From sequence record LR756502.1: a stretch of 64,000 bases of DNA. One strand, written 5' to 3'. The translations under genes and the position numbers were made by a program. The notes below the pieces were generated by a model. That model ran no database searches. It was not told the DNA's origin and saw nothing but the letters and a program-made list of their open reading frames with translations. This document shows, in pieces, positions 930 to 63,208 of this stretch. The stretch's first letter is position 1, and each line of letters begins with the position of its first letter.

Positions 930-1087
930 ATGAGAACAATTAACAAACATAAACATTTTAGTAAATTGAATAAGTGGTTTAGTAACCATCGATTCGAAGC
1001 TAAAGCGTTTTGCTAAATTGTTAATAAACATAAAGGCATAAACTTACTTGAACTCTCGAATTGAAAAATTCGAGAGTTTTTTATTTT
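930..1087 (+). promoter_or_regulatory. Attenuator 1: leader MRTINKHKHFSKLNKWFSNHRFEAKAFC (930-1016) + terminator (1051-1087)
   Basis: His x3, Phe x4, Trp, Lys x5; CGATTCGA (990-997) can pair with terminator arm TCGAATTG (1056-1063); followed by His/Phe/Trp/Lys tRNAs and trpS. Confidence 0.8.
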
Positions 1088-1589: not shown

Positions 1590-1647
1590 ATGAAAACAAA
1601 ACGAAAATATAAAAGATAACTGCTCACTGGATTTTCCATGGGCAGTA
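1590..1647 (+). promoter_or_regulatory. Lys-rich mini-ORF MKTKRKYKR (1590-1619) + hairpin, directly before three tRNA-Lys
   Basis: AAA at codons 2,4,6,8; hairpin ACTGCTCA..TGGA-TTT-TCCA..TGGGCAGT, no U-tract. Confidence 0.45.
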
Positions 1648-1660
1648 TAATATAACACAA

Positions 1661-1746
1661 GTGTCCGTGAGTGAATGGTTGAAACTACCAGTCTTTTAAA
1701 CTGGCTACCGAAAGGTACAATGTGGGTTCGAATCCCACCGGGCACA
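1661..1746 (+). tRNA. tRNA with Lys(UUU) anticodon and long variable arm
   Basis: CCAGT-CTTTTAA-ACTGG; V-arm TACC-GAAA-GGTA; A73. Confidence 0.85.
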
Positions 1747-1758
1747 CAAACATACAAT

Positions 1759-3419: not shown

Positions 3420-3555
3420 ATGAAAACAACTATTAAAAATACAAGTTCACGTAGTCGCTCGAGTAAATCGGGTGAGGTTCGACTGTATTCATAATAGTTA
3501 GTATAAACATATTGTGTAAACCCTCGAACTTAACCGTTTGAGGGTTTTTTGTTTT
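3420..3555 (+). promoter_or_regulatory. Attenuator 2: leader MKTTIKNTSSRSRSSKSGEVRLYS (3420-3494) + terminator (3518-3555)
   Basis: Ser x7, Arg x3; GGTTCGA (3476-3482) pairs with TCGAACT (3524-3530); followed by Arg/Ser tRNAs. Confidence 0.8.
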
Positions 3556-5657: not shown

Positions 5658-5765
5658 ATGAAAACTTTGCACACATATAAAAACGTGATTGACTGGATGT
5701 AAATATCCCGGCTACATAATTATATGTATTCCCAGTCAATAAAAATTGACTGGGATTTTTATTTT
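5658..5765 (+). promoter_or_regulatory. Attenuator 3: leader MKTLHTYKNVIDWM (5658-5702) + terminator (5729-5765)
   Basis: ATTGACTGG (5688-5696) is the exact complement of terminator arm CCAGTCAAT (5732-5740); operon contains RNA ligases and HisRS core. Confidence 0.65.
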
Positions 5766-5988: not shown

Positions 5989-6186
5989 ATGGCAACACAT
6001 ACAAATACACTAACCTCACATCATGGTGAGAGTAGAACATCTAGAGCAGATAAAATGTCTGGTTGGATATCAGAATATAAAAGAATATTTGGTAAATCGG
6101 GAACATCGATGAAAACTGCCAAGACAATAAGTAATAGGAAAAGAAGAATGTTCTTAAAGAACAAAAAAAATTGGACAAAATTATGA
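5989..6186 (+). CDS. Small basic hypothetical protein
   Basis: 65 aa ORF, overlaps next gene. Confidence 0.55.
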   Translation: MATHTNTLTSHHGESRTSRADKMSGWISEYKRIFGKSGTSMKTAKTISNRKRRMFLKNKKNWTKL

Positions 6187-6836
6187 AATCATACCCGAGT
6201 ATAGACTATTTTGATAAAGGACTGTTTGGTGATACTGTTTGGGTATTCGACAAATTGGATGGATCAAATCTTAGAATGGAGTGGAACCGTAAGAGAGGGT
6301 GGTATAAATTTGGAACAAAGTCTGTAATGATTGATGTTAGTAATCCAGATTTTGGAGAAGCTATTCCTATATTTATGGAGAAATATTCCGATGATTTAGA
6401 GAGAGTATTTAAGAAAGAATATTCCAATGTTGAAAGCATTGTTGTTTTCTGTGAGTTTGTTGGAGACAACTCATTCGCTGGTCAGCATCTTGCTTCAGAT
6501 AAGAAGGATGTAGTTCTTTTTGATGTTAATCTTTATAAGAAAGGATTTATACATCCAAAAGATTTCCTCGATAACTTCGGACATCTCCATATACCCAAGT
6601 TGGTATATAAAGGAGAATATAATGACGACCTTATCAAAGATGTTAGAGATAATATCTGGGGTCTAAAAGAAGGTGTAATATGTAAAGGAGTTAGAAAAAC
6701 AAAAGGTGACCACATAGTCTGGATGACTAAGATTAAAACCATCGAATGGTTAAATAAAGTAAAAGAAAAATATGGAGAGAAGGCTCTCCTTGAAGAATTA
6801 AACAATAATAAAAAACTATTAAATTATGGAAATTAA
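6171..6836 (+). CDS. RNA ligase-like nucleotidyltransferase (Rnl2-type core)
   Basis: Motif I KLDGSN, CEFVG, LFDV, EGVICK, KIK. Confidence 0.75.
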   Translation: MDKIMKSYPSIDYFDKGLFGDTVWVFDKLDGSNLRMEWNRKRGWYKFGTKSVMIDVSNPDFGEAIPIFMEKYSDDLERVFKKEYSNVESIVVFCEFVGDNSFAGQHLASDKKDVVLFDVNLYKKGFIHPKDFLDNFGHLHIPKLVYKGEYNDDLIKDVRDNIWGLKEGVICKGVRKTKGDHIVWMTKIKTIEWLNKVKEKYGEKALLEELNNNKKLLNYGN

Positions 6837-7458
6837 ATTAGAATCAACGTATAAAGGAACTCGAATATTATTCGCTGAATCAGCTAAAAGAAAAAGAGAT
6901 ATATTAAATAAGATGATTGAAGTTCTTGAGTCCTATGGGTATCAGGAAATTATGATTCCTATTATTCAAAAACAAGAAACATTCCAATCAAAGGTGGGTG
7001 CTGAAAATCAAAACATGATGTTTAACTTCAAAGATAGAGGTGATCGTGATTTATGTTTATCCCCAGAGTATACCGCAATCGTTCAACAACTTGCTAAAGA
7101 GAAATTCAAATTCACAAACAATGTGAAGATGTTTTATATCGGTGAGTGTTTTAGAGGAGAAAATACACAAGCTGGAAGATGGAGACAATTTACTCAGTTT
7201 GGTGTTGAGATTATAAACCCAACAAAGGACTATTCTGATGAGATGGTTGAAATTGCTGGAAAACTAATTGAGTTAGTTACAAAAAATTATGAGACAAACC
7301 TAGATGCAACTCGTGGACTTGACTACTATAAAGGTGGTAAAGGATTTGAAATAGCTTGTCCAGAATTAGGTTCATCAAAGCAAGTTTGTGGCGGTGGTAC
7401 TTATGAAGGTGGTTTGGGATTCGCAGTGGGTGTTGATAGACTACTATTATGCAAATAA
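6826..7458 (+). CDS. hisS: Histidyl-tRNA synthetase catalytic core only (210 aa)
   Basis: LSPEYTA, motif 2 FRGENTQAGRWRQFTQFGVE, GLDYY, motif 3 GFAVGVDRL; no anticodon-binding domain. Confidence 0.8.
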   Translation: MEIKLESTYKGTRILFAESAKRKRDILNKMIEVLESYGYQEIMIPIIQKQETFQSKVGAENQNMMFNFKDRGDRDLCLSPEYTAIVQQLAKEKFKFTNNVKMFYIGECFRGENTQAGRWRQFTQFGVEIINPTKDYSDEMVEIAGKLIELVTKNYETNLDATRGLDYYKGGKGFEIACPELGSSKQVCGGGTYEGGLGFAVGVDRLLLCK

Positions 7459-15932: not shown

Positions 15933-16487
15933 CTATATATGTTTCCATCTTCTTCTATTTACTATATTCGCTACTGTTTGCTTTGCTATTCCATATTTCT
16001 TTACCAGCTTTCCATATGAGTAACCGCTTTCTCTTAATGATCTTAGCTCTCTTACTTGATCTTCTGTAAGCTTTGATTTTCCGTTTTTTTCTCCCGGACA
16101 TTTTTGTATACCATTTCCTTCTTTTATTCTCTTGTACATTATCTCTCTTAGCTTAGCCTTGGTTTCCTCGCTGTGTTTTTTACCACTCCAACAATCTCCC
16201 CCTTCTCCACCATTTGTTCCATTATAAAGTTTAAATCCCCAAGATTTTATTTGTGATATCCAGAATTTTTCCCAATAGTCCTCTTCTCCTTTATTGACTA
16301 TATCTATAATGGAGATAGTGATATCTTCTCCATTGGATAGTATTTTATTTATTTTTTTTTCTTTATGTGTCCTTTTTAGTATGCACTCCTTTTTATGTTT
16401 ATTTAGTCTTGTAGATAGGCTTATTGTCTTACCTACATAGAATAGGGTGTTATTGTGCTCAAGTGTGTATATGTAATATTTTTCCAT
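15933..16487 (-). CDS. GIY-YIG homing endonuclease with NUMOD3 and C-terminal HTH
   Basis: YYIYTL..FYVGKT, GKKHSEETKAKL, GEKNGKSKLTEDQV. Confidence 0.85.
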   Translation of the reverse strand: MEKYYIYTLEHNNTLFYVGKTISLSTRLNKHKKECILKRTHKEKKINKILSNGEDITISIIDIVNKGEEDYWEKFWISQIKSWGFKLYNGTNGGEGGDCWSGKKHSEETKAKLREIMYKRIKEGNGIQKCPGEKNGKSKLTEDQVRELRSLRESGYSYGKLVKKYGIAKQTVANIVNRRRWKHI

Positions 16488-16570: not shown

Positions 16571-16675
16571 TGCGGGGTAGGGAAGTGGTCATCCCGAGAC
16601 GCTCGTTTTTGATTCTTAAATGATGAAGAAGTGAGATAACGTTTAGATCGTTGGTTCGAATCCAACCCATCGCTA
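16571..16675 (+). tRNA. Initiator-Met-like tRNA interrupted by a 31-nt insert in the anticodon loop
   Basis: AGACG-CTC[31 nt]ATAA-CGTTT; intact D- and T-arms; U1:U72 mismatch. Confidence 0.65.
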
Positions 16676-16834
16676 CAAGAAGGAAGTATTGAAACCCATT
16701 AAAAAGAGAATATACAGACGGGGATCTTTTGAAATTCAGTACTTCTGAAGAATTATAAAAAGTTTACAAAAAATTTGGTGAGGTTAAAAAGTCACCTTAT
16801 CTTTGTAAAAGAAAATTAGAAATAAAAGATATAT

Positions 16835-16909
16835 TGCGGAGGGGTGAAACGGAATTCATGTAAGTCTCATAAACTTTTTCGATAATTGGTTCGACTCCAA
16901 TCTCCGCTA
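16835..16909 (+). tRNA. tRNA-Met(CAU), initiator-like (1:72 mismatch)
   Basis: AAGT-CTCATAA-ACTT, TGCGGAG/CTCCGCT. Confidence 0.8.
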
Positions 16910-16947: not shown

Positions 16948-17100
16948 ATGAATAGATTTACTAACATAGAAACAATAGGGTACACAGGGTATGAGGGCGC
17001 GTATAGCGAACTTTTAGTCAGACCTTTGTCTATGTTATAATGTAAAATATTATACAATTTGATAAAATCCAGTCTGATTAATTTCAGACTGGATTTTTTG
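16948..17100 (+). promoter_or_regulatory. Attenuator 4: leader MNRFTNIETIGYTGYEGAYSELLVRPLSML (16948-17040) + terminator (17064-17100)
   Basis: Tyr x3, Glu x3; TAGTCAGAC (17015-17023) pairs with GTCTGATTA (17072-17080); followed by Glu/Tyr tRNAs. Confidence 0.8.
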
Positions 17101-17160
17101 TGTTTAAAGTTCTTTGAAGATTGAAATTTGGGAGTATAACGTTCCCACCAAAACCAATAT

Positions 17161-17245
17161 GCTACGGTATGCAAATTGGACTAAGCGCCCAGACTTTCAA
17201 TCTGGTCACGAAAGTGGATTGCGGGTTCGAATCCCGTCCGTAGTA
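17161..17245 (+). tRNA. tRNA with Glu(UUC) anticodon, Leu-like body and variable arm
   Basis: CCAGA-CTTTCAA-TCTGG; V-arm CAC-GAAA-GTG. Confidence 0.8.
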
Positions 17246-17259
17246 CAAATATAAAGCAC

Positions 17260-17343
17260 GGGAGTGCGCCAACGTTGGAGAGTTGGGCTAGTCTGTAAAA
17301 CTAGTGGCTTATGCCTGAGTGAGTTCGATTCTCACCACTCCCA
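17260..17343 (+). tRNA. tRNA-Tyr(GUA)
   Basis: CTAGT-CTGTAAA-ACTAG, V-arm. Confidence 0.85.
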
Positions 17344-17354
17344 CAAAGACAGAA

Positions 17355-17426
17355 GGTCCTGTCGACTAAAGGTTAGGTCAACACCCTTTCAAGGTGTAGA
17401 TACGGGTTCGATCCCCGTCAGGATCA
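17355..17426 (+). tRNA. tRNA-Glu(UUC)
   Basis: ACACC-CTTTCAA-GGTGT. Confidence 0.9.
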
Positions 17427-17431
17427 CAAAT

Positions 17432-17513
17432 GGGTCGTTAGCAAAGCGGCAAAGTCGAGGGACTGTAAATCCCTTCCCTTCGGGGTTCGTAGGTTCGAGT
17501 CCTACACGGCCCA
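17432..17513 (+). tRNA. tRNA-Tyr(GUA)
   Basis: AGGGA-CTGTAAA-TCCCT, V-arm. Confidence 0.9.
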
Positions 17514-17522
17514 CTAAAATAT

Positions 17523-17596
17523 GTTCCTATCGACTACGTTGGTTAGGTCACCTGCTTCTCAGGCAGGAGAACTCGGATCGTCACCGAGTGGGAATA
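17523..17596 (+). tRNA. tRNA-Glu(CUC)
   Basis: CCTGC-TTCTCAG-GCAGG. Confidence 0.85.
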
Positions 17597-17655
17597 CAAA
17601 AAATAAAAAGAGAGATTAAACTTTTAATATATACAATTATATAAAACAAGAAACT

Positions 17656-17797
17656 ATGAAAAATTTACATAACATATCAGTTGGAGTTATAGCGATAGGC
17701 GCGGGGAGCGTTTGTCTGTGGCTGAACTATGTTTCGTAAATAGTAAAATATTTATCATAAACTAACCCAGTCACAAAATGACTGGGTTTTTTATTTA
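17656..17797 (+). promoter_or_regulatory. Attenuator 5: leader MKNLHNISVGVIAIGAGSVCLWLNYVS (17656-17739) + terminator (17764-17797)
   Basis: Ile ATA x3, Gly x3, Ala x2; TGTGGCTG (17717-17724) pairs with CAGTCACA (17768-17775); followed by Ile(UAU)/Gly/Ala tRNAs. Confidence 0.8.
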
Positions 17798-18177: not shown

Positions 18178-18804
18178 ATGTATCATACAATTTATAAAAT
18201 AACAAATATACTAAATGATAAAATTTATATAGGCAAACACTCAACAGAAAATTTAGACGATAGTTATATGGGGTCTGGTTCTTATATTAGAAGATCCATA
18301 AAAAAATATGGAGTTGAGAATTTTAAGAAAGAGATTTTGTTTATATTTGATAGCTCAGAAGAGGCATATAAAAAAGAAATAGAAATTGTTAATGAAGACT
18401 TTGTATTAAGAACAGACACTTATAATATTATAACTGGAGGTGATTCATTTGAGGCAATTAACTCTAATGAAGAACTTAGAAAGGAAAAAAATAAAAGGGC
18501 AGCAGTATCAATGAATAGAATTAATTGGACAAATCCTGAGTTTATAAAAAGAAACCATGATAGAATGTCTGAACAAAATAAGAGATTATTTAATGAGGGA
18601 ATACTTAAAGCACCTGATTGGACAGGTAGAAAACACAAGGATGAAACCAAAATTAAACAAAGTATTTCAGCTAAAAAAAGAATTAGAGAGAAAAATAAAC
18701 ATTGTTGGGTATATCATTACGTAGATGGTAATAAAAAAATAAAAATATCCGAAATAGATACATATCTAATCAATGGATGGATAAAGGGAAGAATAATGAA
18801 ATGA
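18178..18804 (+). CDS. GIY-YIG (Seg-like) homing endonuclease inside the tRNA array
   Basis: IYKITN..KIYIGKHST..YMGSG; NUMOD3-like GRKHKDETK; true start ATG 18178. Confidence 0.9.
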   Translation: MYHTIYKITNILNDKIYIGKHSTENLDDSYMGSGSYIRRSIKKYGVENFKKEILFIFDSSEEAYKKEIEIVNEDFVLRTDTYNIITGGDSFEAINSNEELRKEKNKRAAVSMNRINWTNPEFIKRNHDRMSEQNKRLFNEGILKAPDWTGRKHKDETKIKQSISAKKRIREKNKHCWVYHYVDGNKKIKISEIDTYLINGWIKGRIMK

Positions 18805-18898: not shown

Positions 18899-18970
18899 GC
18901 AGTATTGGTGTTTAATGGTAGCATATCTGGTTCCATCCAGTAGGCGTCGGTTCGAATCCGGCACACTGCT
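18899..18970 (+). tRNA. tRNA-Gly-like with 6-nt anticodon loop
   Basis: CTGG-TTCCAT-CCAG; Gly-type GCAGTAT acceptor, U73. Confidence 0.6.
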
Positions 18971-18978
18971 CAAATTAT

Positions 18979-29157: not shown

Positions 29158-29327
29158 ATGAAAACAATGAATTTAAATATGAATCTAAACACACTGACAG
29201 TGGTGAATAATACGTTATGTATTAGACCTTGTGAGGGTTTTGATCTATTTAATGATTTGTAGTATGGCATAAACATTAATAAAGGATAATCAAAACCCTC
29301 AGTCAAAAACTGAGGGTTTTTTGTTTT
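29158..29327 (+). promoter_or_regulatory. Attenuator 6: leader MKTMNLNMNLNTLTVVNNTLCIRPCEGFDLFNDL (29158-29262) + terminator (29292-29327)
   Basis: Asn x7, Leu x6, Thr x4, Val x2; TGAGGGTTTTGAT (29232-29244) is the exact complement of ATCAAAACCCTCA (29289-29301). Confidence 0.85.
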
Positions 29328-29344
29328 AAATAAAATTTAATAAA

Positions 29345-29548
29345 ATGGAACCGGAATTAGAAGAATTAATTATAAGAGAAGAAATGATTGAAGAAATGAA
29401 AAAACTTTTTACAAAGGGACAAACAAACCCAAGTGCAATAACCTCTTTGATGTATATGAAAGGATTCAAGGGTAGATTTATGGAGATTAGAAAAATTGCA
29501 GAATACCAGTATAAGGTTTATACTATGGAAATAAAAAGAAAACAGTAA
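29345..29548 (+). CDS. Hypothetical protein, first gene after attenuator 6
   Basis: ORF track. Confidence 0.55.
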   Translation: MEPELEELIIREEMIEEMKKLFTKGQTNPSAITSLMYMKGFKGRFMEIRKIAEYQYKVYTMEIKRKQ

Positions 29549-30959: not shown

Positions 30960-31394
30960 ATGGTAAAATATGACAAAGAGGAATTTATAAGTGTTTGTGA
31001 GGACAGTCCTACAATGGCTAGAGCGGCTTCTAAATTAGGTATTCATTTTAATACCTTTAGAAGGATAGCTGTTAAGTTGAATTGTTATAGAACAAATCAG
31101 TCCGGAAAGGGTTTAACTAAAAAGAGCGATAGAGGAACACCTTTGTCAGAAATTCTTGAGGGAAAACATCCACAATTTCAATCATTTAAATTGAAAAATA
31201 AATTGATAAAGGAAGGAATAAAAGAGAATAGATGTGAGGTTTGTAATATAAGTGAATGGAATGGGAAAGTGATAAATTGTGAACTAGACCATATAGATGG
31301 TAATAGCAGAAATCACAGATTGGAAAATCTAAGAATACTGTGTCCAAATTGTCACTCACAAACTGATACATTTAGAGCAAAGAATATAAAATAA
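30960..31394 (+). CDS. HNH endonuclease inside the tRNA array
   Basis: CEVC..ELDHIDGNSRNHRLENLRILCPNCH. Confidence 0.9.
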   Translation: MVKYDKEEFISVCEDSPTMARAASKLGIHFNTFRRIAVKLNCYRTNQSGKGLTKKSDRGTPLSEILEGKHPQFQSFKLKNKLIKEGIKENRCEVCNISEWNGKVINCELDHIDGNSRNHRLENLRILCPNCHSQTDTFRAKNIK

Positions 31395-43687: not shown

Positions 43688-46384
43688 ATGTTAAAAAGAA
43701 TATTTCTAAGTTGTGCAATCCTCCTCTTGTCTTTGTATACAAAGGCTCAAATGGTAGGAACCGACGCATATATACAAGGTACTAGCGTTGAAATTGGTAT
43801 TAATGGATTAGGTGGATATGAGGGAGTTAACCAAACTACATCACCACCTCCAGCGGGATATCATGCTCGTGGTACATTTCTACCATTTGGATTTATTGCA
43901 AATCCCCAGGTAAATTCTTGGGCTACTTATGATGGTGACTTTTTTACTCCTGGTAGTCCAGAGAATGGTTGGGGATTCCAAATTGGGTCAACAACCGGAT
44001 CCGCTAACTCTAGAGGTAATAATTGTGCTGGTTTGCAACAAATTAATGGTAGTTTTACAAACTGGTCTCATAACTTCAACTGTTATAATGCTACATGGGA
44101 AGGAGATTACACTTCGGCAACAGACATTCACTTTACTATAAGTTATGATCTTGTTCAGACTGATTTATTTTACACAACAACTGTTTCTATAACAAATAAT
44201 ACTACTGCTACTATTCCAGATTTATATTACTATAGAAATGTTGACCCTGATAATAATGAGGAGATAAGTGGTACCTTTACAACAACACAAACAATAGTAA
44301 GTCAACCAGCTTCTGGTTGTAACCTAGCACACGTTCAGGCCACATCACCAACACCTTGGAACTCGTATCTTGGGTTTGCTGCTATTGGTGCTAATTGGAG
44401 AGCAGACTATGGTGGATTTAGTAATAGAGCCGCTGCTGATTTATGGACTGGTCTTGGATTTACACAAACTGTTGGTGCCACAAATACCGCAGATGAGGGA
44501 ATATCACTAGCATATAGAATACAAAATCTTGCTCCAGGTGCTACAGAAACATTTAAATTTGTGGTTATTTTAGACCCATCATCAGCTACGGCAGCAATTA
44601 ACAACCTACTTTACTTATCATATCCAGGTTCATTAACAGCTCCGCCATCTGTTTGTACACCTTATGCCGATACAATTAGAACATGTGGTGGACCAGTTCC
44701 TATTAACATTGCCGGACCTATTGTTGGTGATTTTAGCTGGACGTGGACACCAACTACTGGTTTAACACCAATTACTGGACCATCTGTTAGTGCTAACCCT
44801 AGTGTAACAACAACATATACCGCAGTTGGTACACCTTTAAGCGCTTGTGTAACACCGGTTTCACTAACATTTGTTGTTTTAATAACTCCGGGTGGTGGAA
44901 CCGCACCTTATATAACACCAGTTGCTCCAGTATGTATCACGACACCACCTTTTAATTTTGTGGCTGATACTCTTGGTGGAGTATGGAGTGGAACAGGAAT
45001 TAGTCCTACAGGAACCTTTAATCCCGCAACTGCTGGAGCTGGTACGTATTTAATAACATATACGACAACCAATACTTGTAATCCTATAGATACAACATAT
45101 ATTACAGTAAGTGGTTCAGACCCTACAATAACTACACATATTCCTGTTTGTGCAGGTTCCTCACCTTATACTTTAACTGCCGCATCTACTGGTGGTGTAT
45201 GGAGTGGTGGTGGAATTAGTCCTACAGGAGTTTTTACACCTAGTACTGCCGGTACTTTTGTTATAACATACACACTTTCAGGGTTGTGTGCAGCAACAGA
45301 TACCGTAACATTAGTTGTAAACCCAACCGTACCACCGATAACAGGTATTTCATACATCACACCTGTATGTATAAGTGGTACTAACCCAACACCAATACCT
45401 GTATCAGGATTCACTGTCGGTGGTGTATATAGTTCAACACCAGGATTATCTTTGAATACTGGAACTGGAGTTGTAAATTTAGCGGGTAGTACACCTGGTA
45501 CATATACAATAACATATTCTTATGCAGCAACTGTTTGTGGACCGGCAGGTTCAAGTAGTACAACTTTAGTTATAACTCCACTAATAGTGCCAGTTTTAGG
45601 ATTCTCATATAATAGTGTTTGTGTTGATGGTGTTGATCCATCCCCTATCACAGTTGCTGGATTTACAACCGGTGGTGTTTACTCATGTCCTGGTTTATCA
45701 ATAAACCCAGCAACTGGAGTAATAGACTTATCATCTAGTTCACCTGGTACATATACTGTTACATATACTGTTACAGGATCATCTGTTCTATGTACCTCTG
45801 GTGGTACTAGTACATCTACTATAACTATTAAACCACTTCCGGTTATAATTATATCTTCTGATCAAACAATATTTCTTGGTCAAAGTACGCTTATATTTGC
45901 TAGTGGTGGAACAATATATAATTGGAGTCCCTCACAAGGGTTGAATACAACTACTAATGATAGTGCTATTGCTTCACCAGTTGTAACAACAACATATTGT
46001 GTTGGTGTTTCTAGTTTAGGTTGTATTGATACAATGTGTGTTAAAGTTAATGTTGAAATTCCTTGTCCAAGTAATAGAAATATGGGAGTACCAAATGCAT
46101 TTACTCCAAATGGTGATGGTAATAATGATCAACTATGTTTAGATGGTTGGGATGATTGTATCTCAAACTTTGAAATAAGAATATTTGACCGTTGGGGTGA
46201 GAAAGTATTTGAATCTAAAAATCCTGGCTTTTGTTGGGATGGTGTGTATAAGGGTAAGCCTTTAGATCCAGCTGTCTTTGTTTACTACATTACTGCATCA
46301 TATAATGTTGATGGTGTTTTACCAACATCACAGACAAGTACTACTAAGGTTAATAAAACAGGAAATATCTCATTGATTAGATAA
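43688..46384 (+). CDS. Secreted Thr/Gly/Pro-rich surface protein with T9SS type B (gliding-motility-associated) C-terminal domain
   Basis: Signal peptide; repeated Ig/PKD-like units (GGVWSG.GI...G.F.P); VPNAFTPNGDG.ND..IFDRWGEKVFES..WDG.YKG. Confidence 0.88.
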   Translation: MLKRIFLSCAILLLSLYTKAQMVGTDAYIQGTSVEIGINGLGGYEGVNQTTSPPPAGYHARGTFLPFGFIANPQVNSWATYDGDFFTPGSPENGWGFQIGSTTGSANSRGNNCAGLQQINGSFTNWSHNFNCYNATWEGDYTSATDIHFTISYDLVQTDLFYTTTVSITNNTTATIPDLYYYRNVDPDNNEEISGTFTTTQTIVSQPASGCNLAHVQATSPTPWNSYLGFAAIGANWRADYGGFSNRAAADLWTGLGFTQTVGATNTADEGISLAYRIQNLAPGATETFKFVVILDPSSATAAINNLLYLSYPGSLTAPPSVCTPYADTIRTCGGPVPINIAGPIVGDFSWTWTPTTGLTPITGPSVSANPSVTTTYTAVGTPLSACVTPVSLTFVVLITPGGGTAPYITPVAPVCITTPPFNFVADTLGGVWSGTGISPTGTFNPATAGAGTYLITYTTTNTCNPIDTTYITVSGSDPTITTHIPVCAGSSPYTLTAASTGGVWSGGGISPTGVFTPSTAGTFVITYTLSGLCAATDTVTLVVNPTVPPITGISYITPVCISGTNPTPIPVSGFTVGGVYSSTPGLSLNTGTGVVNLAGSTPGTYTITYSYAATVCGPAGSSSTTLVITPLIVPVLGFSYNSVCVDGVDPSPITVAGFTTGGVYSCPGLSINPATGVIDLSSSSPGTYTVTYTVTGSSVLCTSGGTSTSTITIKPLPVIIISSDQTIFLGQSTLIFASGGTIYNWSPSQGLNTTTNDSAIASPVVTTTYCVGVSSLGCIDTMCVKVNVEIPCPSNRNMGVPNAFTPNGDGNNDQLCLDGWDDCISNFEIRIFDRWGEKVFESKNPGFCWDGVYKGKPLDPAVFVYYITASYNVDGVLPTSQTSTTKVNKTGNISLIR

Positions 46385-46410
46385 ATCTACTAATTTTACT
46401 TATATTTAAA

Positions 46411-46564
46411 CCCTCGGATAAAAATTCGAGGGTTTTTGTTTAAAAGAATTAATATATAACCTATGAGACACATGAAAAAATTTAATGCCCTCGGATAAAA
46501 ATTCGAGGGTTTTTGTTTAAAAGAATTAATATATAACCTATGAGACACATGAAAAAATTTAATG
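46411..46564 (+). repeat. Perfect 77-bp tandem duplication (terminator + TAATATATA + MRHMKKFN start)
   Basis: 46411-46487 identical to 46488-46564. Confidence 0.9.
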
Positions 46565-49957: not shown

Positions 49958-50119
49958 ATGAAAAACTTAATCTTAAATATCGCAATTCAAGTACAACGTC
50001 AAGTTGTTGTCGATCAGGATCAACCGGATACGACTGAGGCTAATTGCGATTTTATAAGAGAGTAAAATAATACTTGAATTATACAAACCCAGTTAGTCTA
50101 TGATTAACTGGGTTTTTTT
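49958..50119 (+). promoter_or_regulatory. Attenuator 7: leader MKNLILNIAIQVQRQVVVDQDQPDTTEANCDL (49958-50056) + terminator (50085-50119)
   Basis: Asp x4, Gln x5, Pro; GGCTAATTG (50038-50046) pairs with CAGTTAGTC (50090-50098); followed by Pro/Asp tRNAs. Confidence 0.75.
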
Positions 50120-50130
50120 ATTGCTTAAAA

Positions 50131-50752: not shown

Positions 50753-50822
50753 GGTGCTGTCGTCTAATGATAGGATGCTCCCATTGGAGGGAGTGATGTA
50801 GGTTTGATTCCTAACTGTACCG
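50753..50822 (+). pseudogene. tRNA-like gene with 6-nt anticodon loop (ATTGGA)
   Basis: CTCCC-ATTGGA-GGGAG; D- and T-arms present. Confidence 0.5.
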
Positions 50823-50833
50823 CAAAAATAATA

Positions 50834-50936: not shown

Positions 50937-51052
50937 ATGACAACTTCATTTCAGCAACAACAGCAACAACAAATTAATCGAACAGATTGATGTGGAATGA
51001 TATTGTTTAAATATTACACCCGTTAGTCTGAGGAGATTAACGGGTTTTTTAT
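50937..51052 (+). promoter_or_regulatory. Attenuator 8: poly-Gln leader MTTSFQQQQQQQINRTD (50937-50990) + terminator (51018-51052)
   Basis: 7 consecutive CAG/CAA codons; CAGATTGATG (50983-50992) pairs with CGTTAGTCTG (51021-51030); followed by 4 tRNA-Gln and glnS. Confidence 0.9.
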
Positions 51053-51123
51053 TGTCCGATAGTGTAGAGGTAACACAAGGGTCTTTGGTCCCCTTATCAC
51101 TGGTTCGATCCCAGTTCGGATAA
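51053..51123 (+). tRNA. tRNA-Gln(UUG)
   Basis: U1:A72; CTTTGGT loop. Confidence 0.85.
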
Positions 51124-51130: not shown

Positions 51131-51214
51131 TGCGGAATCCCATAATGGCATTGGTCCTGACTTTGAATCAGGTGGAATGAAAATTCTGTGTAGGTTCGAA
51201 TCCTACTTCCGCAT
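51131..51214 (+). tRNA. tRNA-Gln(UUG) with long variable arm
   Basis: CCTGA-CTTTGAA-TCAGG; V-arm GGAAT-GAAA-ATTCT. Confidence 0.85.
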
Positions 51215-51219
51215 CAAAT

Positions 51220-51397: not shown

Positions 51398-52999
51398 ATG
51401 AATTTCATTGAAGATAAAATAATAGAGAAAAATAACTTAGATAAACTAAAGTTAAGATTTCCACCAGAAAACTCAGGTTATATCCACCTGGGTCATGCCA
51501 AATCTATCTGTCTTAATTTTGGACTAGCATTAAAATATAACAGACCTTGTAATTTAAGGTTTGATGATACTAACCCATCCAATGAATCTGACGATTTCAC
51601 AAGATCAATAATTGAAGATATCAAATGGTTAGGATTCACACCATCTGAGACTCTATATACCTCTGATTATTTCTCTGAACTATACAACTATGCAATCATC
51701 CTAATTAGAAAAGGATTAGCTTACGTTGATGATTCAACATCAGAAGAAATTGCCTTATTAAAAGGAACACCAACATCTGTTGGTAAAGATTCTCCATATA
51801 AATCAAGAACTATCGAAGAGAACTTAGACTTATTCAATAGAATGAAATTAGGTGAATTCACAGAGGGTTCTAAAACACTTAGAGCAAACATTGATATGAC
51901 TTCATCTAATATGATATTGAGAGATCCTATCATATATAGAATGATTAATAAGACACACCACAATGTTGGTGATGCTTGGAAGATATATCCAATGTATGAT
52001 TTTGCACATCCATTGTCTGACTATATTGAAGGTATAACTGACTCTTTGTGTACTATGGAATTTGAGGTACATTTGCCTTTATATATGTGGGTATTGAAAA
52101 ATTGTGATTTAAAAAATTCTTTACCGGAAGAAACTGAGTTTGCTCGATTGAACATTGATTTTACAATAATGAGTAAGAGAAAACTAAAGAGATTAGTTGA
52201 AGAAGGATTTGTTTCTGGATGGGATGATCCAAGAATGCCTACTATCTCTGGATTAAGAAGAAGAGGATTTACACCAAAAAGTATTAGAGATTTTTGTGAA
52301 GAAATTTCTGTAACAAGAAGTAACTCTATAATTAGTCATAAAGTATTAGAAGAGTGTTTAAGAACAGATTTGAATAAGTCAGCTAATAGAATGATGGGTG
52401 TTATTGACCCTGTTAAATTGACTATTACTAATTGGGTTGGTGGTACTGAATGGGTTGAAATAGAGAATAACCCAGAAGATCCAAACGCTGGAACTAGATT
52501 GGTTCCTTTTACTGGAGTGTTGTGGATTGAGATAGAAGACTTTAGATTAGAAGCTGATAAGAAATTTCACAGATTAAAGTTGAATGAAGAAGTTAGATTA
52601 AAAGGTGGATACGTTGTTAAAGCAACCGATGTTGTTATGAATGGTGATGTTATATCTGAGATAAAATGTACATTCGATCCTAACTCTAAATCTGGAATGG
52701 TTTTAGATAGAAAGGTAAAAGGAGTAATTCACTGGGTATCTGTTGAACACGCTGTTAACTTAGATGTTAATGAGTATGATACTTTATTTACTGAATCTAA
52801 TCCTGATGATTTAGAAGATTTTACAACTTGTATTAATCCTAATTCTTTAATTGTGAATACAAAGGCTATGTTTGAACCACATATAATGGCACTTGAAGTT
52901 GGTGTTCCGGTTCAAATGATGAGAAAAGGATATTATTGTCTTGACAAGGATGGTGTTTTTAACAAGACCGTTTCATTGAAAGAAGGTTGGAAAGGATAA
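51398..52999 (+). CDS. glnS: Glutaminyl-tRNA synthetase
   Basis: RFPPENSGYIHLGHAK, LRFDDTNP, YPMYDFAH, SKRKL, GWDDPRMPTI.GLRRRG, VKGVIHWVS. Confidence 0.95.
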   Translation: MNFIEDKIIEKNNLDKLKLRFPPENSGYIHLGHAKSICLNFGLALKYNRPCNLRFDDTNPSNESDDFTRSIIEDIKWLGFTPSETLYTSDYFSELYNYAIILIRKGLAYVDDSTSEEIALLKGTPTSVGKDSPYKSRTIEENLDLFNRMKLGEFTEGSKTLRANIDMTSSNMILRDPIIYRMINKTHHNVGDAWKIYPMYDFAHPLSDYIEGITDSLCTMEFEVHLPLYMWVLKNCDLKNSLPEETEFARLNIDFTIMSKRKLKRLVEEGFVSGWDDPRMPTISGLRRRGFTPKSIRDFCEEISVTRSNSIISHKVLEECLRTDLNKSANRMMGVIDPVKLTITNWVGGTEWVEIENNPEDPNAGTRLVPFTGVLWIEIEDFRLEADKKFHRLKLNEEVRLKGGYVVKATDVVMNGDVISEIKCTFDPNSKSGMVLDRKVKGVIHWVSVEHAVNLDVNEYDTLFTESNPDDLEDFTTCINPNSLIVNTKAMFEPHIMALEVGVPVQMMRKGYYCLDKDGVFNKTVSLKEGWKG

Positions 53000-54213: not shown

Positions 54214-54338
54214 ATGAGAAAGATAATTAAATTAAAAGATGATCGTTATTTATGGACTGACTGCCTCGCAGATTAGTGATAGATAACTATTACCTATAAT
54301 CTTCAAACCCAGTCAGAAATGACTGGGTTTTTTATTTT
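54214..54338 (+). promoter_or_regulatory. Attenuator 9: leader MRKIIKLKDDRYLWTDCLAD (54214-54276) + terminator (54305-54338)
   Basis: Asp x4; CTGACTG (54257-54263) pairs with CAGTCAG (54310-54316); directly before aspS. Confidence 0.8.
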
Positions 54339-54362: not shown

Positions 54363-55640
54363 ATGAAAAGAATAAACGTAAATCAATTAGAAAACTTTAT
54401 CGGTCAAACTGTACTGGTAAAAGGATGGGTATCTCAATTTAGAGAACTTAAAAAAATGTCTTTCCTTATTTTAAGAGAAAGAACTGGATATTGTCAAATC
54501 ATTATCCCAAAAGAAATTAGTGAATCACTTTCACCTGAGTCTGTTGTCGAGGTTATCGGAACAGTTAAAGTAGAAAGTCAATCTCGTTATGGTGGTTATG
54601 AAATTGTAGCTGAGTCAGTTAAAGTAACATCAGTTGCCCAACTACTTCCTTTTCCTATAAACAGAGAAGAAGGTATTCCCGCTTTCAACACATTAAACAT
54701 ATTTAGACCTTTAACATTAAGAAAGGAAAAAGAAAGATGTATATTCAAAATTCAATCTGAGATTATCTGGGCTTATAGAGAATATTTAAGAAGTCAAGGG
54801 TTTACTGAAATACAATCTACTAAAATGTCTGCAGCTGGATTAGAAGGTGGATCAGAAATGTTTGAGATAGAATACTTTGGTCAAAAAATGTATTTAACTC
54901 AATCACCACAGTTTTATAAACAAATGATGGTTGGTGTTTATGAAAGAGTATTTGAAGTTGGTAAAGTTTACCGTGCTGAAGGTTCTAACTCCAACAAACA
55001 CTTAACCGAGTTTGTTGGTTTTGAATTCGAAATGGGATTCATTGAATCTGTTGAAGAAGTTATGCAAATGGAAGAAAATGTATTTGAGTATATCTTTACT
55101 CACTTAACATCTGTTTGTGAGAAAGAATTGGGATATTTAGAAGTAGAACTTAAATTTAATCCTATTCCAAGAGTAACTTACGCTGAGGTGATTGAGATTA
55201 TAAAAAATGAATATGGAATTACTTATGAGAAAGTAGGATTAAATACTGAAGCTGAAAGATTAATTTCTGAGTATATCTTTAGTAAGACTGGTTCTGAATT
55301 TGTTTTCATTACAAAATATCCACTTTCAGAAAGACCGTTCTATGCAATGCCTTCTGTTGAAGAAGGATGTTCAGAGACATTTGAATTGTTATATAAGGGA
55401 ATGGAGATTACTTCTGGTGGTCAACGTATTCATAACTATGAAGAATTAGTAAAATCAATTGAGTCTAAGGGATTAAACCCAGAAGCTTTTGAAAGTTACT
55501 TAATGGCTTTTAAGTTTGGAATGCCAACACATGGTGGTATGGGTATTGGATTAGAAAGAGTTGTTAAACAGATGTTAAATTTATCATCAGCTGAAGAAGC
55601 TTCTTTAATTCCAAGAACAAAAGAGAAGTGGATACACTAA
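54363..55640 (+). CDS. aspS: Aspartyl-tRNA synthetase, short archaeal/non-discriminating type
   Basis: OB-fold N-terminus, LTQSPQFYKQ, YRAE..HLTEF, EITSGGQRIH, PTHGGMGIGLER; no GAD insertion. AsnRS not fully excluded. Confidence 0.85.
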   Translation: MKRINVNQLENFIGQTVLVKGWVSQFRELKKMSFLILRERTGYCQIIIPKEISESLSPESVVEVIGTVKVESQSRYGGYEIVAESVKVTSVAQLLPFPINREEGIPAFNTLNIFRPLTLRKEKERCIFKIQSEIIWAYREYLRSQGFTEIQSTKMSAAGLEGGSEMFEIEYFGQKMYLTQSPQFYKQMMVGVYERVFEVGKVYRAEGSNSNKHLTEFVGFEFEMGFIESVEEVMQMEENVFEYIFTHLTSVCEKELGYLEVELKFNPIPRVTYAEVIEIIKNEYGITYEKVGLNTEAERLISEYIFSKTGSEFVFITKYPLSERPFYAMPSVEEGCSETFELLYKGMEITSGGQRIHNYEELVKSIESKGLNPEAFESYLMAFKFGMPTHGGMGIGLERVVKQMLNLSSAEEASLIPRTKEKWIH

Positions 55641-62159: not shown

Positions 62160-63098
62160 AAAAAGTCTACCCCTTCGTCCTCGATGGGTAATATCCAAAT
62201 AAAGACGCAAATAGGATGTTTCAGACTTTGTACCAAGCTTCGACTTCGGTTGTTGTGTAGGTAGGGCGGCTTATAGTCCTTAAATAAACCTCGAAAGGGG
62301 GATAAAGTGAGTATCATTGCTAAATGATATTTGCGGTTTGAACTGAAAGGTTTGAGCTCGAGTAAGCAAGCGAAATACCACAAAATCTGTAGTAATGAGG
62401 GTAACTCCGTAGTGAAACGATTTTGTGATTGGGTGAACGTAGGTCACTTGATTGACTTCGGAAGAAGAACAGGAATAATTCGTAGGAATTTTGTGAGAAA
62501 TATCGGCTTAACCGGCTAGTATGATTGCGAGTTCTAATTCAAGAGATGTCTTAAAGTTGAAAGACAATTCTTCTACCAGGTGGTGCTGTTGAAGAACATT
62601 AATCTGACTACCAAGTTGGTAGGTATCATCGCAAGGTGGTATCGTGATGAAGAAATCTTAAAGAATTGTGATGGAGGCATCACACAGAGTAGTTCAGTAT
62701 TTTGTCTGTCAAAAACGGATGAAGCTGAGAGGAGACCACTACTTTGACTTAATCTACAAGCACAAAAAATTTACTTATGATGTAAAAACTATAACTAAAT
62801 CAAAAGTGTTTCCTAGTTATCAATGAAAATTGACTACTTAGCCGTGAGTTGTTCACGGTCACATTAAGCCCGAAAGGCGGATGTGATTTCAGAGAAAAGC
62901 TTATAGAGGGTCGAACCTCTAATCAGTTCGCAAGACTGAATAAGTGGAGTAAATGGAGAATAGTTGATAACTTAAGGAGTGGTTGGTCTAACTAACCGTC
63001 ATTGACAAGTTACTACTCAAAAGGTAGTGGATAGATTTGGGAATAAATAATCCAAACAGAGGCTTGTTGTTTTAGGATGTAATCTCAGTCCTTTTTTT
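62160..63098 (+). ncRNA. Large (~0.9 kb) structured ncRNA, GOLLD/ROOL-class candidate
   Basis: No credible ORF, higher GC, many hairpins (CCTC-GAAA-GGGG, GAG-GGTAA-CTC, TATCATC-GCAA-GGTGGTA, GTGATG/CATCAC, CCGTGA/TCACGG, AGAGG/CCTCT), flanked by tRNAs, ends in U-tract. Family not verified. Confidence 0.7.
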
Positions 63099-63100
63099 AT

Positions 63101-63173: not shown

Positions 63174-63177
63174 CAAC

Positions 63178-63208
63178 AACCCACCGATCTGGTGGGTTTT
63201 TTTATTTT
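63178..63208 (+). terminator. Intrinsic terminator
   Basis: AACCCACC-GATCT-GGTGGGTT followed by T-tract. Confidence 0.85.

What the first reader, a model, noticed from the sequence alone, without database searches (positions are those of the whole stretch)
16948..17596. Tyr/Glu leader before Glu-Tyr-Glu-Tyr-Glu tRNAs
GYTGYEGAYSE carries TAC/TAT and GAA/GAG; the cluster has Tyr(GUA) x2, Glu(UUC) x2 and Glu(CUC). Antiterminator pairing is 9 bp.
Basis: partly seen in the sequence, partly recalled or inferred. Interest (0 to 1): 0.78.

Follow-up and report, generated by a model that had tools for sequence, protein, structure and literature searches.

The report
Codon-matched leader peptides gating phage tRNA genes
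In a 642-kb phage of Bacteroidota, each block of tRNA genes follows a tiny reading frame rich in the codons those tRNAs read, plus a transcription stop signal; this looks like the classic trp-type attenuator reused so that the phage makes a tRNA only when decoding of its codons runs short.

Summary
A 30-codon ORF (16948-17040) carries Tyr and Glu codons. A strong intrinsic terminator follows (17064-17097 plus U-tract), then tRNA Glu-Tyr-Glu-Tyr-Glu (17161-17597). A 10-bp alternative pairing (17014-17023 with 17072-17081) can sequester the terminator's 5' arm.

Alone, this unit is statistically weak: Tyr/Glu enrichment p is about 0.1 and the antiterminator p is 0.08. But it is one of seven such units in the window:
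- His/Phe/Trp/Lys
- Arg/Ser
- Glu/Tyr
- Ile/Gly/Ala
- Asn/Leu/Val/Thr/Ile
- Pro/Asp
- Gln

An eighth unit precedes an AspRS gene. The true leader-to-tRNA-set pairing is the single best of 5040 permutations. So is the true leader-to-terminator complementarity, in two genomes independently. All seven types recur in a phage with about 75% DNA identity, and some recur in a 735-kb phage and in IMG/VR contigs. There, peptides and terminators have diverged, but codon bias and complementarity are kept, with compensatory changes.

Best reading: ribosome-mediated attenuation that gates tRNA transcription by decoding capacity. I found no report of this in the literature. Nothing has been tested experimentally.

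The parts
16774..16805 (+). Bacteroidota sigma-A-type promoter (TTTG-N20-TATCTTTG) driving the unit
   Evidence: The pattern TTTG-N17-21-TAnnTTTG is found 16 times against 2.85 expected, all on the + strand. Matches lie upstream of leaders A, C, E and F. The TAnnTTTG -7 box is the flavobacterial sigma-A consensus (PMC9723704).
16838..16910 (+). tRNA-Met(CAU) lying between the promoter and the leader ORF, so outside the attenuator's control
   Evidence: Found by relaxed ARAGORN and by Rfam tRNA at 35.7 bits, 16835-16909.
16948..17040 (+). Leader ORF C, 30 codons: MNRFTNIETIGYTGYEGAYSELLVRPLSML
   Evidence: Homologous ORFs of 28 codons are in L001, L003 and L019.
16981..17010 (+). Regulatory stretch: TAC, TAT, GAG, TAT and GAA at codons 12, 15, 16, 19 and 21
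   Evidence: Read from the sequence. Homologues have YESYYEE (6 of 7, corrected p=0.002) and YEAYEY (5 of 6, corrected p=0.016) at the same place.
17014..17023 (+). Segment 2, the 5' strand of the antiterminator (ttagtcagac), inside the ORF 4 nt after the last Glu codon
   Evidence: Duplex with 17072-17081, dG -12.6. The core GTCAGAC is invariant in all four homologues and forms the RNAalifold consensus helix. It uses Val codon GTC, which is only 4.1% of Val codons in this genome.
17037..17053 (+). Small conserved hairpin (ataatgt/atattat) spanning the stop codon, in the loop of the antiterminator
   Evidence: RNAalifold columns 99-105 pair with 114-120, kept in 4 of 4 sequences with one-sided changes. 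Its role is inferred.
17064..17105 (+). Intrinsic terminator: 14-bp stem, loop ttaatt, U-tract. Segment 3, the partner of segment 2, is 17072-17081
17130..17147 (+). Relic of a deleted tRNA (gggagtataacgttccca); relatives have a full tRNA here
   Evidence: Comparison with L001 19475-19545 and L003.
17161..17597 (+). Regulated genes: tRNA Glu(UUC), Tyr(GUA), Glu(UUC), Tyr(GUA), Glu(CUC)
   Evidence: ARAGORN and Rfam.
930..1087 (+). Unit A: leader MRTINKHKHFSKLNKWFSNHRFEAKAFC plus terminator, followed by tRNA His, Phe, His, Phe, Trp and Lys x3
3420..3555 (+). Unit B: leader MKTTIKNTSSRSRSSKSGEVRLYS plus terminator, followed by tRNA Arg(ACG), four Ser tRNAs (Ser(UGA) x2, Ser(GCU), Ser(GGA)) and Arg(UCG). 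All Arg codons in the leader are CGN
   Evidence: Compensatory changes relative to L004 are seen.
17656..17796 (+). Unit D: leader MKNLHNISVGVIAIGAGSVCLWLNYVS plus terminator, followed by tRNA Ile(UAU), Gly x3 and Ala. All Ile codons in the leader are ATA
29158..29328 (+). Unit E: leader MKTMNLNMNLNTLTVVNNTLCIRPCEGFDLFNDL plus terminator, followed by Asn, Arg(UCU), Leu, Val, Ile(GAU) and Thr tRNAs. The antiterminator is a perfect 12 bp
49958..50123 (+). Unit F: leader MKNLILNIAIQVQRQVVVDQDQPDTTEANCDFIRE plus terminator, followed by tRNA Pro x2 and Asp x3
50937..51053 (+). Unit G: leader MTTSFQQQQQQQINRTD plus terminator, followed by tRNA-Gln x4 and then GlnRS (51398-52999). The antiterminator overlaps the stop codon
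   Evidence: Gln is 7 of 16 codons against a 2.2% background, p=2e-8.
54214..54338 (+). Related unit before a synthetase gene: leader MRKIIKLKDDRYLWTDCLAD plus terminator, followed by non-discriminating AspRS (54363-55640)
   Evidence: It is conserved in L004, with a compensatory change between leader and terminator.

Best explanation
This is a ribosome-mediated (leader-peptide) transcription attenuator whose regulated products are tRNA genes.

Proposed mechanism:
1. Host RNA polymerase starts at the Bacteroidota-type promoter (16774-16805) and transcribes tRNA-Met and then the 30-codon leader.
2. A ribosome translates the leader while the polymerase moves into the terminator.
3. If charged tRNA-Tyr and tRNA-Glu, host plus phage, are plentiful, the ribosome runs through codons 12-21 and over segment 2 (17014-17023) to the stop codon. 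The terminator hairpin (17064-17097) then forms and transcription ends before the tRNA genes.
4. If decoding of Tyr or Glu codons is slow, the ribosome stalls at codons 12-16. Segment 2 stays free and pairs with the 5' arm of the terminator (17072-17081). The terminator cannot form, and the polymerase reads into tRNA Glu-Tyr-Glu-Tyr-Glu.
5. The new tRNAs relieve the stall. This closes a negative feedback loop specific to those amino acids.

The same device, with other codons, gates every tRNA block of this phage and at least one synthetase gene. Some units lie in series in one operon (C then D; F then G then GlnRS).

Shown by sequence analysis: the ORFs, the codon-to-tRNA match, the terminators, the specific and conserved complementarity, and the lack of room for separate promoters in five of the seven units.

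Inferred, not shown: translation of the leaders, stalling, the direction of the response, and the physiological trigger.
For: 1. Seven of seven + strand terminators lying less than 400 nt upstream of tRNAs are preceded by a 17-35-codon ORF that ends 19-33 nt before the stem.

2. Leader amino-acid content matches the downstream tRNA set. The true assignment is the unique best of 5040 permutations, and each cluster's own leader scores highest.

3. The match holds at codon level.
- Leader B uses only CGN for Arg, 5 of 5 in two genomes. The genome uses CGN for 13% of Arg codons, and the tRNAs downstream are Arg(ACG) and Arg(UCG).
- Leader E uses AGA with Arg(UCU) downstream, and ATT with Ile(GAU).
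- Leader D uses ATA with Ile(UAU).

4. Each leader is complementary to its own terminator's 5' arm. The true pairing is the unique best of 5040 in the window, and again in LR745206.1. Shuffle tests give p=0.01-0.08 per unit, Fisher combined 5e-6.

5. Conservation with turnover. All seven types are present in LR745206.1 with diverged peptides.
- Gln and Pro/Asp leaders occur in eight further IMG/VR contigs.
- His/Phe/Trp/Lys and Leu leaders occur in the 735-kb phage.
- Compensatory changes are seen in B (aggttcga/tcgaactt against agattcga/tcgaatct), in A (three different terminators, each matched by its own leader) and in the AspRS unit.
- In L011 the Gln leader matches an unrelated terminator: -15.6 with its own against -3.6 to -9.4 for the other Gln leaders with that terminator.

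6. A natural experiment. In L019/L020 the Glu/Tyr and Ile/Gly/Ala blocks are fused with no second leader. The single leader there reads IEAIGYEGGAYSI, which mixes both codon sets.

7. The first tRNA starts 8-19 nt after the terminator stem in five of seven units, so those tRNAs can only be made by read-through.

8. Folding with a masked ribosome footprint gives the mean probability that the 5' arm is sequestered: 0.68 with the ribosome stalled at regulatory codons, 0.39 with it at the stop codon. For unit C in the window the values are 0.58 and 0.42.

9. Synthetase genes carry the same device. An Asp-rich leader precedes AspRS, and an Asn/Arg-rich leader precedes AsnRS plus an ArgRS-like gene in LR745206.1. 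This parallels the known pheST attenuator.

10. The predicted host phylum has leader-peptide attenuation (PMC9723704). The host is predicted to be Bacteroidetes (PMC7162821).

11. The same detector finds no such units in two unrelated tRNA-rich phages.
Against: - There are no expression, Term-seq or ribosome-profiling data, so translation of the leaders is not shown.
- Unit C by itself is weak. Glu+Tyr enrichment is p=0.105, and the antiterminator is p=0.08 and only 10 AU-rich base pairs. Its leader pairs about as well with terminator B (-12.9) as with its own (-12.6).
- The antiterminator core of family C is invariant, so that family shows conservation but no covariation.
- In units A and C-F, segment 2 ends 12-18 nt before the stop codon. 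A terminating ribosome would barely cover it, so the off state must rely on a transiently translating ribosome or on a protector helix. Such a helix is clear only in B and plausible in C.
- In unit E the antiterminator is predicted to form in all modelled states.
- The 33 units used are related sequences, so its Wilcoxon p-value is inflated.
- More tRNA does not help if the shortage is of the amino acid rather than the tRNA.
Confidence: 0.78

Rival explanations
1. The device is an attenuator that reports general translation status (ribosome availability, or coupling of translation to transcription) rather than decoding of particular codons. On this view the codon bias of the leaders is secondary.
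For: A unit with the same architecture at 5658-5755 (MKTLHTYKNVIDWM, conserved in L004) has no evident codon bias. The bias of unit C in the window is not significant alone. In several units segment 2 sits where any ribosome passing through would mask it.
Against: The leader composition matches the downstream tRNA set uniquely among 5040 assignments. The match holds at synonymous-codon level. It tracks changes in cluster content between genomes, as in the fused cluster of L019. Seven Gln codons in sixteen cannot be incidental.
Confidence: 0.1
2. The short ORFs are ordinary small-protein genes with their own terminators. The tRNAs are made from separate promoters or by constitutive leak, so nothing is regulated.
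For: The terminators are strong and would also serve as gene ends. In unit E a 67-codon ORF and 235 nt separate the terminator from the first tRNA, and in unit C 63 nt do.
Against: In five units the tRNA begins 8-19 nt after the stem, which leaves no room for a promoter. The peptides diverge freely except for codon composition and the RNA-pairing segment. The specific complementarity between leader and terminator has no role for a plain gene end.
Confidence: 0.06
3. The leader RNA senses tRNA directly by codon-anticodon pairing without translation, in the manner of a T-box.
For: Both regulate translation-apparatus genes through a terminator/antiterminator switch keyed to a codon.
Against: No T-box or any other Rfam cis-regulatory family matches the leaders even at E<=1. 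The codons lie in a conserved reading frame with ATG and stop kept across homologues, and length differences are multiples of three. Up to seven tandem codons are present rather than one specifier.
Confidence: 0.03
4. It is a chance co-occurrence of a short ORF, a terminator and tRNAs in AT-rich DNA.
For: For unit C alone the statistics are weak.
Against: (1 of 5040 each, the second reproduced in another genome), conservation, and the negative controls.
Confidence: 0.01

Closest known systems
Leader-peptide attenuators of amino-acid biosynthesis operons (trpL, hisL, leuL, thrL, pheL, ilv leaders of Proteobacteria; similar elements reported in Flavobacterium, PMC9723704)
   Same: Both have a short ORF with clustered regulatory codons, an intrinsic terminator, and an antiterminator that uses the terminator's 5' arm. 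Read-out is through the position of the ribosome.
   Different: The regulated genes here are tRNA genes, not enzymes, so the product itself resolves the stall. Many leaders carry mixed codon sets of two to five amino acids that mirror a mixed tRNA block. Units are chained within one operon. The element belongs to a phage. No Rfam leader family matches. A clear protector (1:2) helix is seen only in some units.
E. coli pheST attenuator (pheM leader), which controls a synthetase by Phe codons (from my own knowledge of the field)
   Same: Both place a translation-apparatus gene under a codon-matched leader peptide and terminator. The AspRS unit (54214-54338) and the AsnRS unit of LR745206.1 are direct analogues, and GlnRS lies downstream of the Gln leader.
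   Different: In pheST the target is a protein. Here most targets are the tRNAs themselves, and the system covers most amino acids in one genome.
T-box riboswitches
   Same: Both sense the state of a specific tRNA and switch a terminator to regulate genes of aminoacylation.
   Different: A T-box binds uncharged tRNA directly through a specifier codon and the conserved T-box sequence, without translation. None of these features is present here. T-boxes are also not typical of Bacteroidota (my own knowledge).

Membership tests
Ribosome-mediated (leader-peptide) transcription attenuators | Short ORF in the 5' leader with clustered codons cognate to the regulated function | tested here: met
   There are seven leaders, and the codon/tRNA assignment is the unique best of 5040. 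Unit C alone is weak but is strong in its homologues.
Ribosome-mediated (leader-peptide) transcription attenuators | Intrinsic terminator between the leader ORF and the regulated genes | tested here: met
   Stems of 10-14 bp followed by a U-tract lie 19-33 nt after each stop codon.
Ribosome-mediated (leader-peptide) transcription attenuators | Antiterminator pairing that excludes the terminator and involves a leader segment downstream of the regulatory codons | tested here: met
   Cognate complementarity is the unique best of 5040 in two genomes. Compensatory changes are seen in families A, B, G and the AspRS unit. In family C the helix is conserved but shows no covariation.
Ribosome-mediated (leader-peptide) transcription attenuators | Geometry in which a stalled ribosome frees the antiterminator while an unstalled one, or a protector helix, prevents it | tested here: inconclusive
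   Footprint-masked folding favours the model on average (0.68 against 0.39). It does not for unit E, and the effect for unit C is modest. A protector helix is clear only in B.
Ribosome-mediated (leader-peptide) transcription attenuators | Read-through depends on leader translation and on the charged-tRNA level | not testable with these tools
   This needs reporter assays, in vitro coupled systems or transcript end mapping.
Ribosome-mediated (leader-peptide) transcription attenuators | Regulated genes are amino-acid biosynthesis, transport or synthetase genes (the classical target set) | tested here: not met
   The targets of seven units are tRNA genes. Only the AspRS unit, and GlnRS downstream of unit G, fit the classical set.
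Curated Rfam leader families (Trp, His, Thr, Leu and others) | Match to the family covariance model | tested here: not met
   cmscan of the whole window at E<=1 gives no hit in any leader region.
T-box riboswitch | Stem I with specifier loop and the conserved T-box antiterminator sequence | tested here: not met
   There is no RF00230 hit at E<=1, and the codons lie in a conserved reading frame.

The most novel reading that the evidence does not exclude
The largest known phages run a modular tRNA homeostat. Every amino-acid-specific block of tRNA genes, and several synthetase genes, is gated by its own codon-matched leader peptide, and some gates lie in series in one operon. The phage would thereby measure the infected cell's decoding capacity codon family by codon family and top up only the tRNAs that are short. 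Such a shortage could arise when host tRNAs are degraded by defence anticodon nucleases or by the phage's own host shut-off. This would be the first case of tRNA gene transcription controlled by translation of the cognate codons.
Probability: 0.6. Interest if true: 0.9.

Novelty: new variant of a known kind. Interest (0 to 1): 0.85.

Why it matters
How cells and viruses match tRNA supply to codon demand is an old open question. tRNA genes are usually thought to be controlled globally (growth rate, stringent response), not one amino acid at a time.

A leader-peptide attenuator in front of tRNA genes would be a direct feedback loop for each codon family, built only from RNA and the ribosome. It would explain how huge phages can carry 50 or more tRNA genes without flooding the cell. 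It also suggests a built-in response to tRNA-targeting host defences.

The system gives compact, portable sensors of the availability of individual charged tRNAs. It is directly testable with short reporter constructs. It also shows that unannotated 17-35-codon ORFs in phage 'tRNA islands' carry regulatory information.

Tried and rejected
- **Known RNA families.** Rfam at gathering threshold and at E<=1 found only tRNAs and GOLLD. There was no T-box and no known leader family in the leader regions.

- **Literature.** Eight full-text searches were made. Six looked for leader-peptide attenuation of tRNA genes or phage tRNA regulation, one covered GOLLD and one covered Bacteroidetes attenuation; none reported this. 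The genome paper (PMC7162821) does not mention leaders or attenuation. Naville & Gautheret 2010 has no tRNA-gene attenuators.

- **More Glu/Tyr-leader homologues.**
  - A mis-specified terminator pattern found nothing.
  - The corrected pattern and a leader pattern found only the L003/L006 lineage.
  - The Toprim-like neighbour protein gave two IMG/VR and four metagenome loci, adding one new variant, L019/L020.
  - The genome-contig scan gave one chance hit in a Psychrobacter MAG with no tRNAs.
  - Family C therefore has only four distinct members and no covariation in its core helix.

- **Flanks.** The 50 kb on each side of the window in LR756502.1 contain no tRNAs and no further units.

- **Ser codons in the 735-kb phage's A-type leader.** These looked like a match to a Ser(CGA) tRNA in that cluster, but none is TCG, so I do not count it.

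- **Specificity control.** The detector finds no comparable units in Yersinia phage fHe-Yen9-03 or Klebsiella phage KaAlpha.

- **Formal covariation test.** I did not attempt an R-scape-type test. The families are too small, and their terminators align poorly.
Full report
**What the window is.**
The window is identical to positions 372001-436000 of LR756502.1, a 642,428-bp 'uncultured phage'. It is one of the four largest complete phage genomes of Al-Shayeb et al. 2020 (PMC7162821). That paper places these genomes in the Mahaphage clade and predicts Bacteroidetes hosts; it says nothing about leaders or attenuation.

- The DNA is 32.7% G+C.
- ARAGORN finds 44 tRNA genes, and Rfam and relaxed ARAGORN add about ten more, all on the + strand.
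- The 50 kb on either side hold no tRNA genes, so the window contains the whole tRNA island.
- It also holds GluRS, GlnRS, a non-discriminating AspRS, a truncated HisRS-like gene, a protein with a type IX secretion CHU_C domain, and a GOLLD RNA.
- The Bacteroidota sigma-A promoter pattern TTTG-N17-21-TAnnTTTG occurs 16 times against 2.85 expected, always on the + strand. The TAnnTTTG box is the flavobacterial consensus (PMC9723704).

**The observation.**
- The ORF at 16948-17040 encodes MNRFTNIETIGYTGYEGAYSELLVRPLSML, with TAC, TAT, GAG, TAT and GAA at codons 12, 15, 16, 19 and 21.
- After 23 nt comes a 14-bp hairpin with a U-tract (17064-17105).
- Then come tRNA Glu(UUC), Tyr(GUA), Glu(UUC), Tyr(GUA) and Glu(CUC) at 17161-17597.
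- Codons 23-26 (ttagtcagac, 17014-17023) can pair with gtctgattaa (17072-17081), which is the 3' half of the terminator's 5' arm plus part of the loop. This is 10 bp with one G.U, dG -12.6 kcal/mol.

Taken alone this unit is not statistically convincing. Glu+Tyr is 6 of 29 codons against an 11.4% background (p=0.105). The best local window does not survive correction. The antiterminator beats dinucleotide shuffles only at p=0.08.

**It is one of a series.**
I listed every + strand terminator in the window. All seven that lie within 400 nt upstream of tRNA genes are preceded by an ATG-initiated ORF of 17-35 codons that ends 19-33 nt before the stem.

| Unit | Leader peptide | Downstream tRNAs |
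|---|---|---|
| A | MRTINKHKHFSKLNKWFSNHRFEAKAFC | His, Phe, His, Phe, Trp, Lys x3 |
| B | MKTTIKNTSSRSRSSKSGEVRLYS | Arg(ACG), four Ser tRNAs, Arg(UCG) |
| C | the finding | Glu, Tyr, Glu, Tyr, Glu |
| D | MKNLHNISVGVIAIGAGSVCLWLNYVS | Ile(UAU), Gly x3, Ala |
| E | MKTMNLNMNLNTLTVVNNTLCIRPCEGFDLFNDL | Asn x2, Arg(UCU), Leu, Val, Ile(GAU), Thr ... |
| F | MKNLILNIAIQVQRQVVVDQDQPDTTEANCDFIRE | Pro x2, Asp x3 |
| G | MTTSFQQQQQQQINRTD | Gln x4, then GlnRS |

I scored each leader against each cluster by the fraction of its codons whose amino acid has a tRNA in that cluster. The true assignment is the single best of all 5040 permutations, and every cluster's own leader scores highest.

The match extends to synonymous codons:
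- Leader B uses only CGN for Arg, where the genome uses CGN for 13% of Arg codons. The tRNAs downstream are Arg(ACG) and Arg(UCG).
- Leader E uses AGA and ATT ahead of Arg(UCU) and Ile(GAU).
- Leader D uses ATA ahead of Ile(UAU).

In five of the seven units the first tRNA begins 8-19 nt after the terminator stem. These tRNAs therefore cannot have their own promoter and must be made by read-through.

**The alternative pairing.**
For every unit, the best duplex between the leader (start codon to terminator) and the terminator's 5' arm plus loop lies in the 3' part of the ORF. It is always downstream of the biased codons, and in unit G it overlaps the stop codon. Energies are -9 to -16 kcal/mol.
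- Against dinucleotide shuffles the seven window units give p=0.01-0.08, Fisher combined 5e-6.
- More telling, when leaders are paired with one another's terminators, the true pairing is the unique best of 5040. This holds in the window and again, independently, in the related phage.

**Relatives.**
LR745206.1 (634,780 bp, about 75% DNA identity in these regions) has all seven leader types before the corresponding tRNA blocks. The peptides have drifted but keep their bias. Examples:
- C: MNTITNIASYESYYEEGNLVRRNNYVVM
- G: MTTTQQIQQQQINQTD
- B: MKTINNTSKSSSRSSSMSEIRLYS

Further relatives:
- Anchoring on the phage GlnRS gave nine IMG/VR loci. Eight of them carry a Gln-run leader; six of these also carry a Pro/Asp leader, and one (L011) carries instead a Leu/Glu/Arg/Ile leader before a matching mixed block.
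- The 735-kb phage LR756501.1 has an A-type leader before Trp, His, His, Phe, Lys, and a Leu-rich leader (8 of 22 codons) before five tRNA-Leu genes.

Compensatory evolution is visible:
- B: aggttcga/tcgaactt in the window against agattcga/tcgaatct in the relative, plus a second helix over the regulatory codons that also covaries.
- A: three genomes with three different terminators, each matched by its own leader segment.
- The AspRS unit: ACTGACTG/CAGTCAG against ACTAACTG/CAGTTAGT.
- L011: its Gln terminator is unrelated to the others, yet it pairs at -15.6 with its own leader against -3.6 to -9.4 with the other Gln leaders.

For family C there are four distinct members (window, L001, L003/L006/L017/L022, L019/L020).
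- The Tyr/Glu runs are stronger than in the window: YESYYEE has corrected p=0.002 and YEAYEY has corrected p=0.016.
- RNAalifold returns the antiterminator as its consensus helix. Its core GTCAGAC/GTCTGAY is invariant, so it is conserved without covariation.
- That core uses Val codon GTC, which is 4.1% of Val codons here. This points to constraint on the RNA rather than on the peptide.

A natural experiment supports codon tracking. In L019/L020 the Glu/Tyr and Ile/Gly/Ala blocks are contiguous and there is no D leader. The single leader reads MNTIFNIEAIGYEGGAYSISNVRPLSML, which mixes both codon sets.

**Mechanism.**
The anatomy is that of classical ribosome-mediated attenuation. I modelled it by folding each transcript up to the terminator loop with a 28-nt ribosome footprint made unpairable. 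The mean probability that the terminator's 5' arm is already paired upstream was:

| State modelled | All units | Unit C in the window |
|---|---|---|
| Ribosome stalled at a regulatory codon | 0.68 | 0.58 |
| No ribosome | 0.57 | 0.38 |
| Ribosome at the stop codon | 0.39 | 0.42 |

. The units are related, so the p-value printed in that call is inflated. Unit E shows no difference between states.

In units A and C-F, segment 2 ends 12-18 nt before the stop codon. The 'off' state therefore probably relies on the ribosome passing over segment 2 while the polymerase completes the terminator, or on a protector helix. Such a helix is clear only in B and plausible in C.

Because the regulated products are the tRNAs that read the regulatory codons, the circuit is a negative feedback on decoding capacity. 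Units C then D, and F then G then GlnRS, lie in series behind single host-type promoters. Each block would then be gated separately within one operon.

Synthetase genes use the same device:
- An Asp-rich leader and terminator precede the non-discriminating AspRS (54214-54338). This is conserved in the relative.
- In LR745206.1 the leader MKTMTINNRNRLTDII precedes AsnRS and an ArgRS-like gene.

**Rivals.**
- A T-box-like or other known riboswitch is excluded by Rfam and by the conserved reading frames.
- Ordinary small genes with separate tRNA promoters are excluded in five of the seven units by the 8-19-nt spacing. They also do not explain the specific leader-terminator complementarity.
- Chance is excluded by the permutation tests. 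The same detector also finds nothing comparable in two unrelated tRNA-rich phages.
- A sensor of general translation status remains possible for some units. The unit at 5658-5755 has the architecture but no codon bias. This does not account for the codon matching elsewhere.

**Comparison with what is known.**
It works like the trp/his/leu/thr/phe attenuators and like the pheST attenuator of E. coli. Leader-peptide attenuation has been inferred in Flavobacterium (PMC9723704). It is not a member of any curated Rfam leader family.

It departs from the classical set in four ways:
- the targets are tRNA genes;
- the leaders carry mixed codon sets that mirror mixed tRNA blocks;
- the units are chained in series;
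- the element is viral.

Eight full-text searches and the genome paper gave no report of leader-peptide control of tRNA genes. The library does not cover most subscription journals, so the absence is not proof.

**Verdict.**
It is greatly strengthened by the discovery that this is one of at least eight codon-matched units conserved across the largest known phages. I class it as a new variant of a known mechanism. Confidence in the attenuation mechanism is about 0.78 for the system and somewhat lower for unit C alone. All functional steps remain to be tested.

Noticed in passing
window 62685-63198: A full-length GOLLD RNA (275 bits) is directly followed by an odd tRNA-like gene (63101-63174, irregular anticodon loop) and a terminator (63178-63198).
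   Followed up: no
window 1661-1747, 1759-1847, 17161-17246, 51131-51215: tRNA-Lys(UUU), tRNA-Glu(UUC) and tRNA-Gln(UUG) copies of 85-89 nt have a long, type-II-like variable arm capped by GAAA. They sit beside normal-length isoacceptors. Long arms are normally confined to Leu, Ser and Tyr tRNAs (and Sec).
   Followed up: partly
window 16572-16674: A tRNA-Met(CAU) has a 31-nt insert in the anticodon loop, which may be an intron.
   Followed up: no
window 18899-18971, 50753-50823, 17523-17597: Several tRNA-like genes have 6- or 8-nt anticodon loops or a non-canonical T-loop (GATCGTCAC in Glu(CUC)). The odd T-loop is conserved in relatives.
   Followed up: no
window 1590-1660; L004 23137-23200: A Lys-rich mini-ORF (MKTKRKYKR; relative MKTKLKYKR) lies immediately before the Lys tRNAs. 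It is followed at once by a hairpin whose sequence differs between the two phages and which has no U-tract. It may be a different kind of Lys-specific switch.
   Followed up: partly
window 54214-54338; L004 16525-16647; L005 4376-4487: Leader peptide plus terminator units also precede synthetase genes. An Asp-rich leader precedes the non-discriminating AspRS, and in LR745206.1 an Asn/Arg-rich leader precedes AsnRS and an ArgRS-like gene.
   Followed up: partly
window 5658-5763; L004 25086-25188: A conserved unit has attenuator architecture (MKTLHTYKNVIDWM, with a 9-bp antiterminator at the ORF end) but no obvious codon bias. It lies ahead of two small basic ORFs, a KxDG ligase-like gene (6171-6836) and a truncated HisRS-like gene (6826-7458).
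   Followed up: partly
window 912, 11490, 15906(-), 17623, 18153, 29139, 53016 and others: The motif TTTAATATATA occurs 10 times against 0.98 expected, typically 8-25 nt before start codons. It may be a phage-specific promoter or an initiation signal.
   Followed up: partly
window 15933-16487(-), 18180-18804(+), 30960-31394(+): GIY-YIG and HNH homing-endonuclease ORFs are inserted within the tRNA arrays. The GIY-YIG genes match seg-like genes of T4-like and Vibrio phages.
   Followed up: no
window 17130-17147: A relic of a deleted tRNA (gggagtataacgttccca) lies between terminator C and the first tRNA-Glu. Relatives have a full tRNA at this position.
   Followed up: partly
window 29345-29548: A 67-codon ORF sits between terminator E and the first tRNA-Asn. 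It is absent at the same place in LR745206.1.
   Followed up: no
window 43688-46510: An 898-aa protein has a type IX secretion CHU_C sorting domain, a Bacteroidota hallmark, in a phage. It is followed by two near-identical tandem terminators (46408-46435 and 46487-46510).
   Followed up: no
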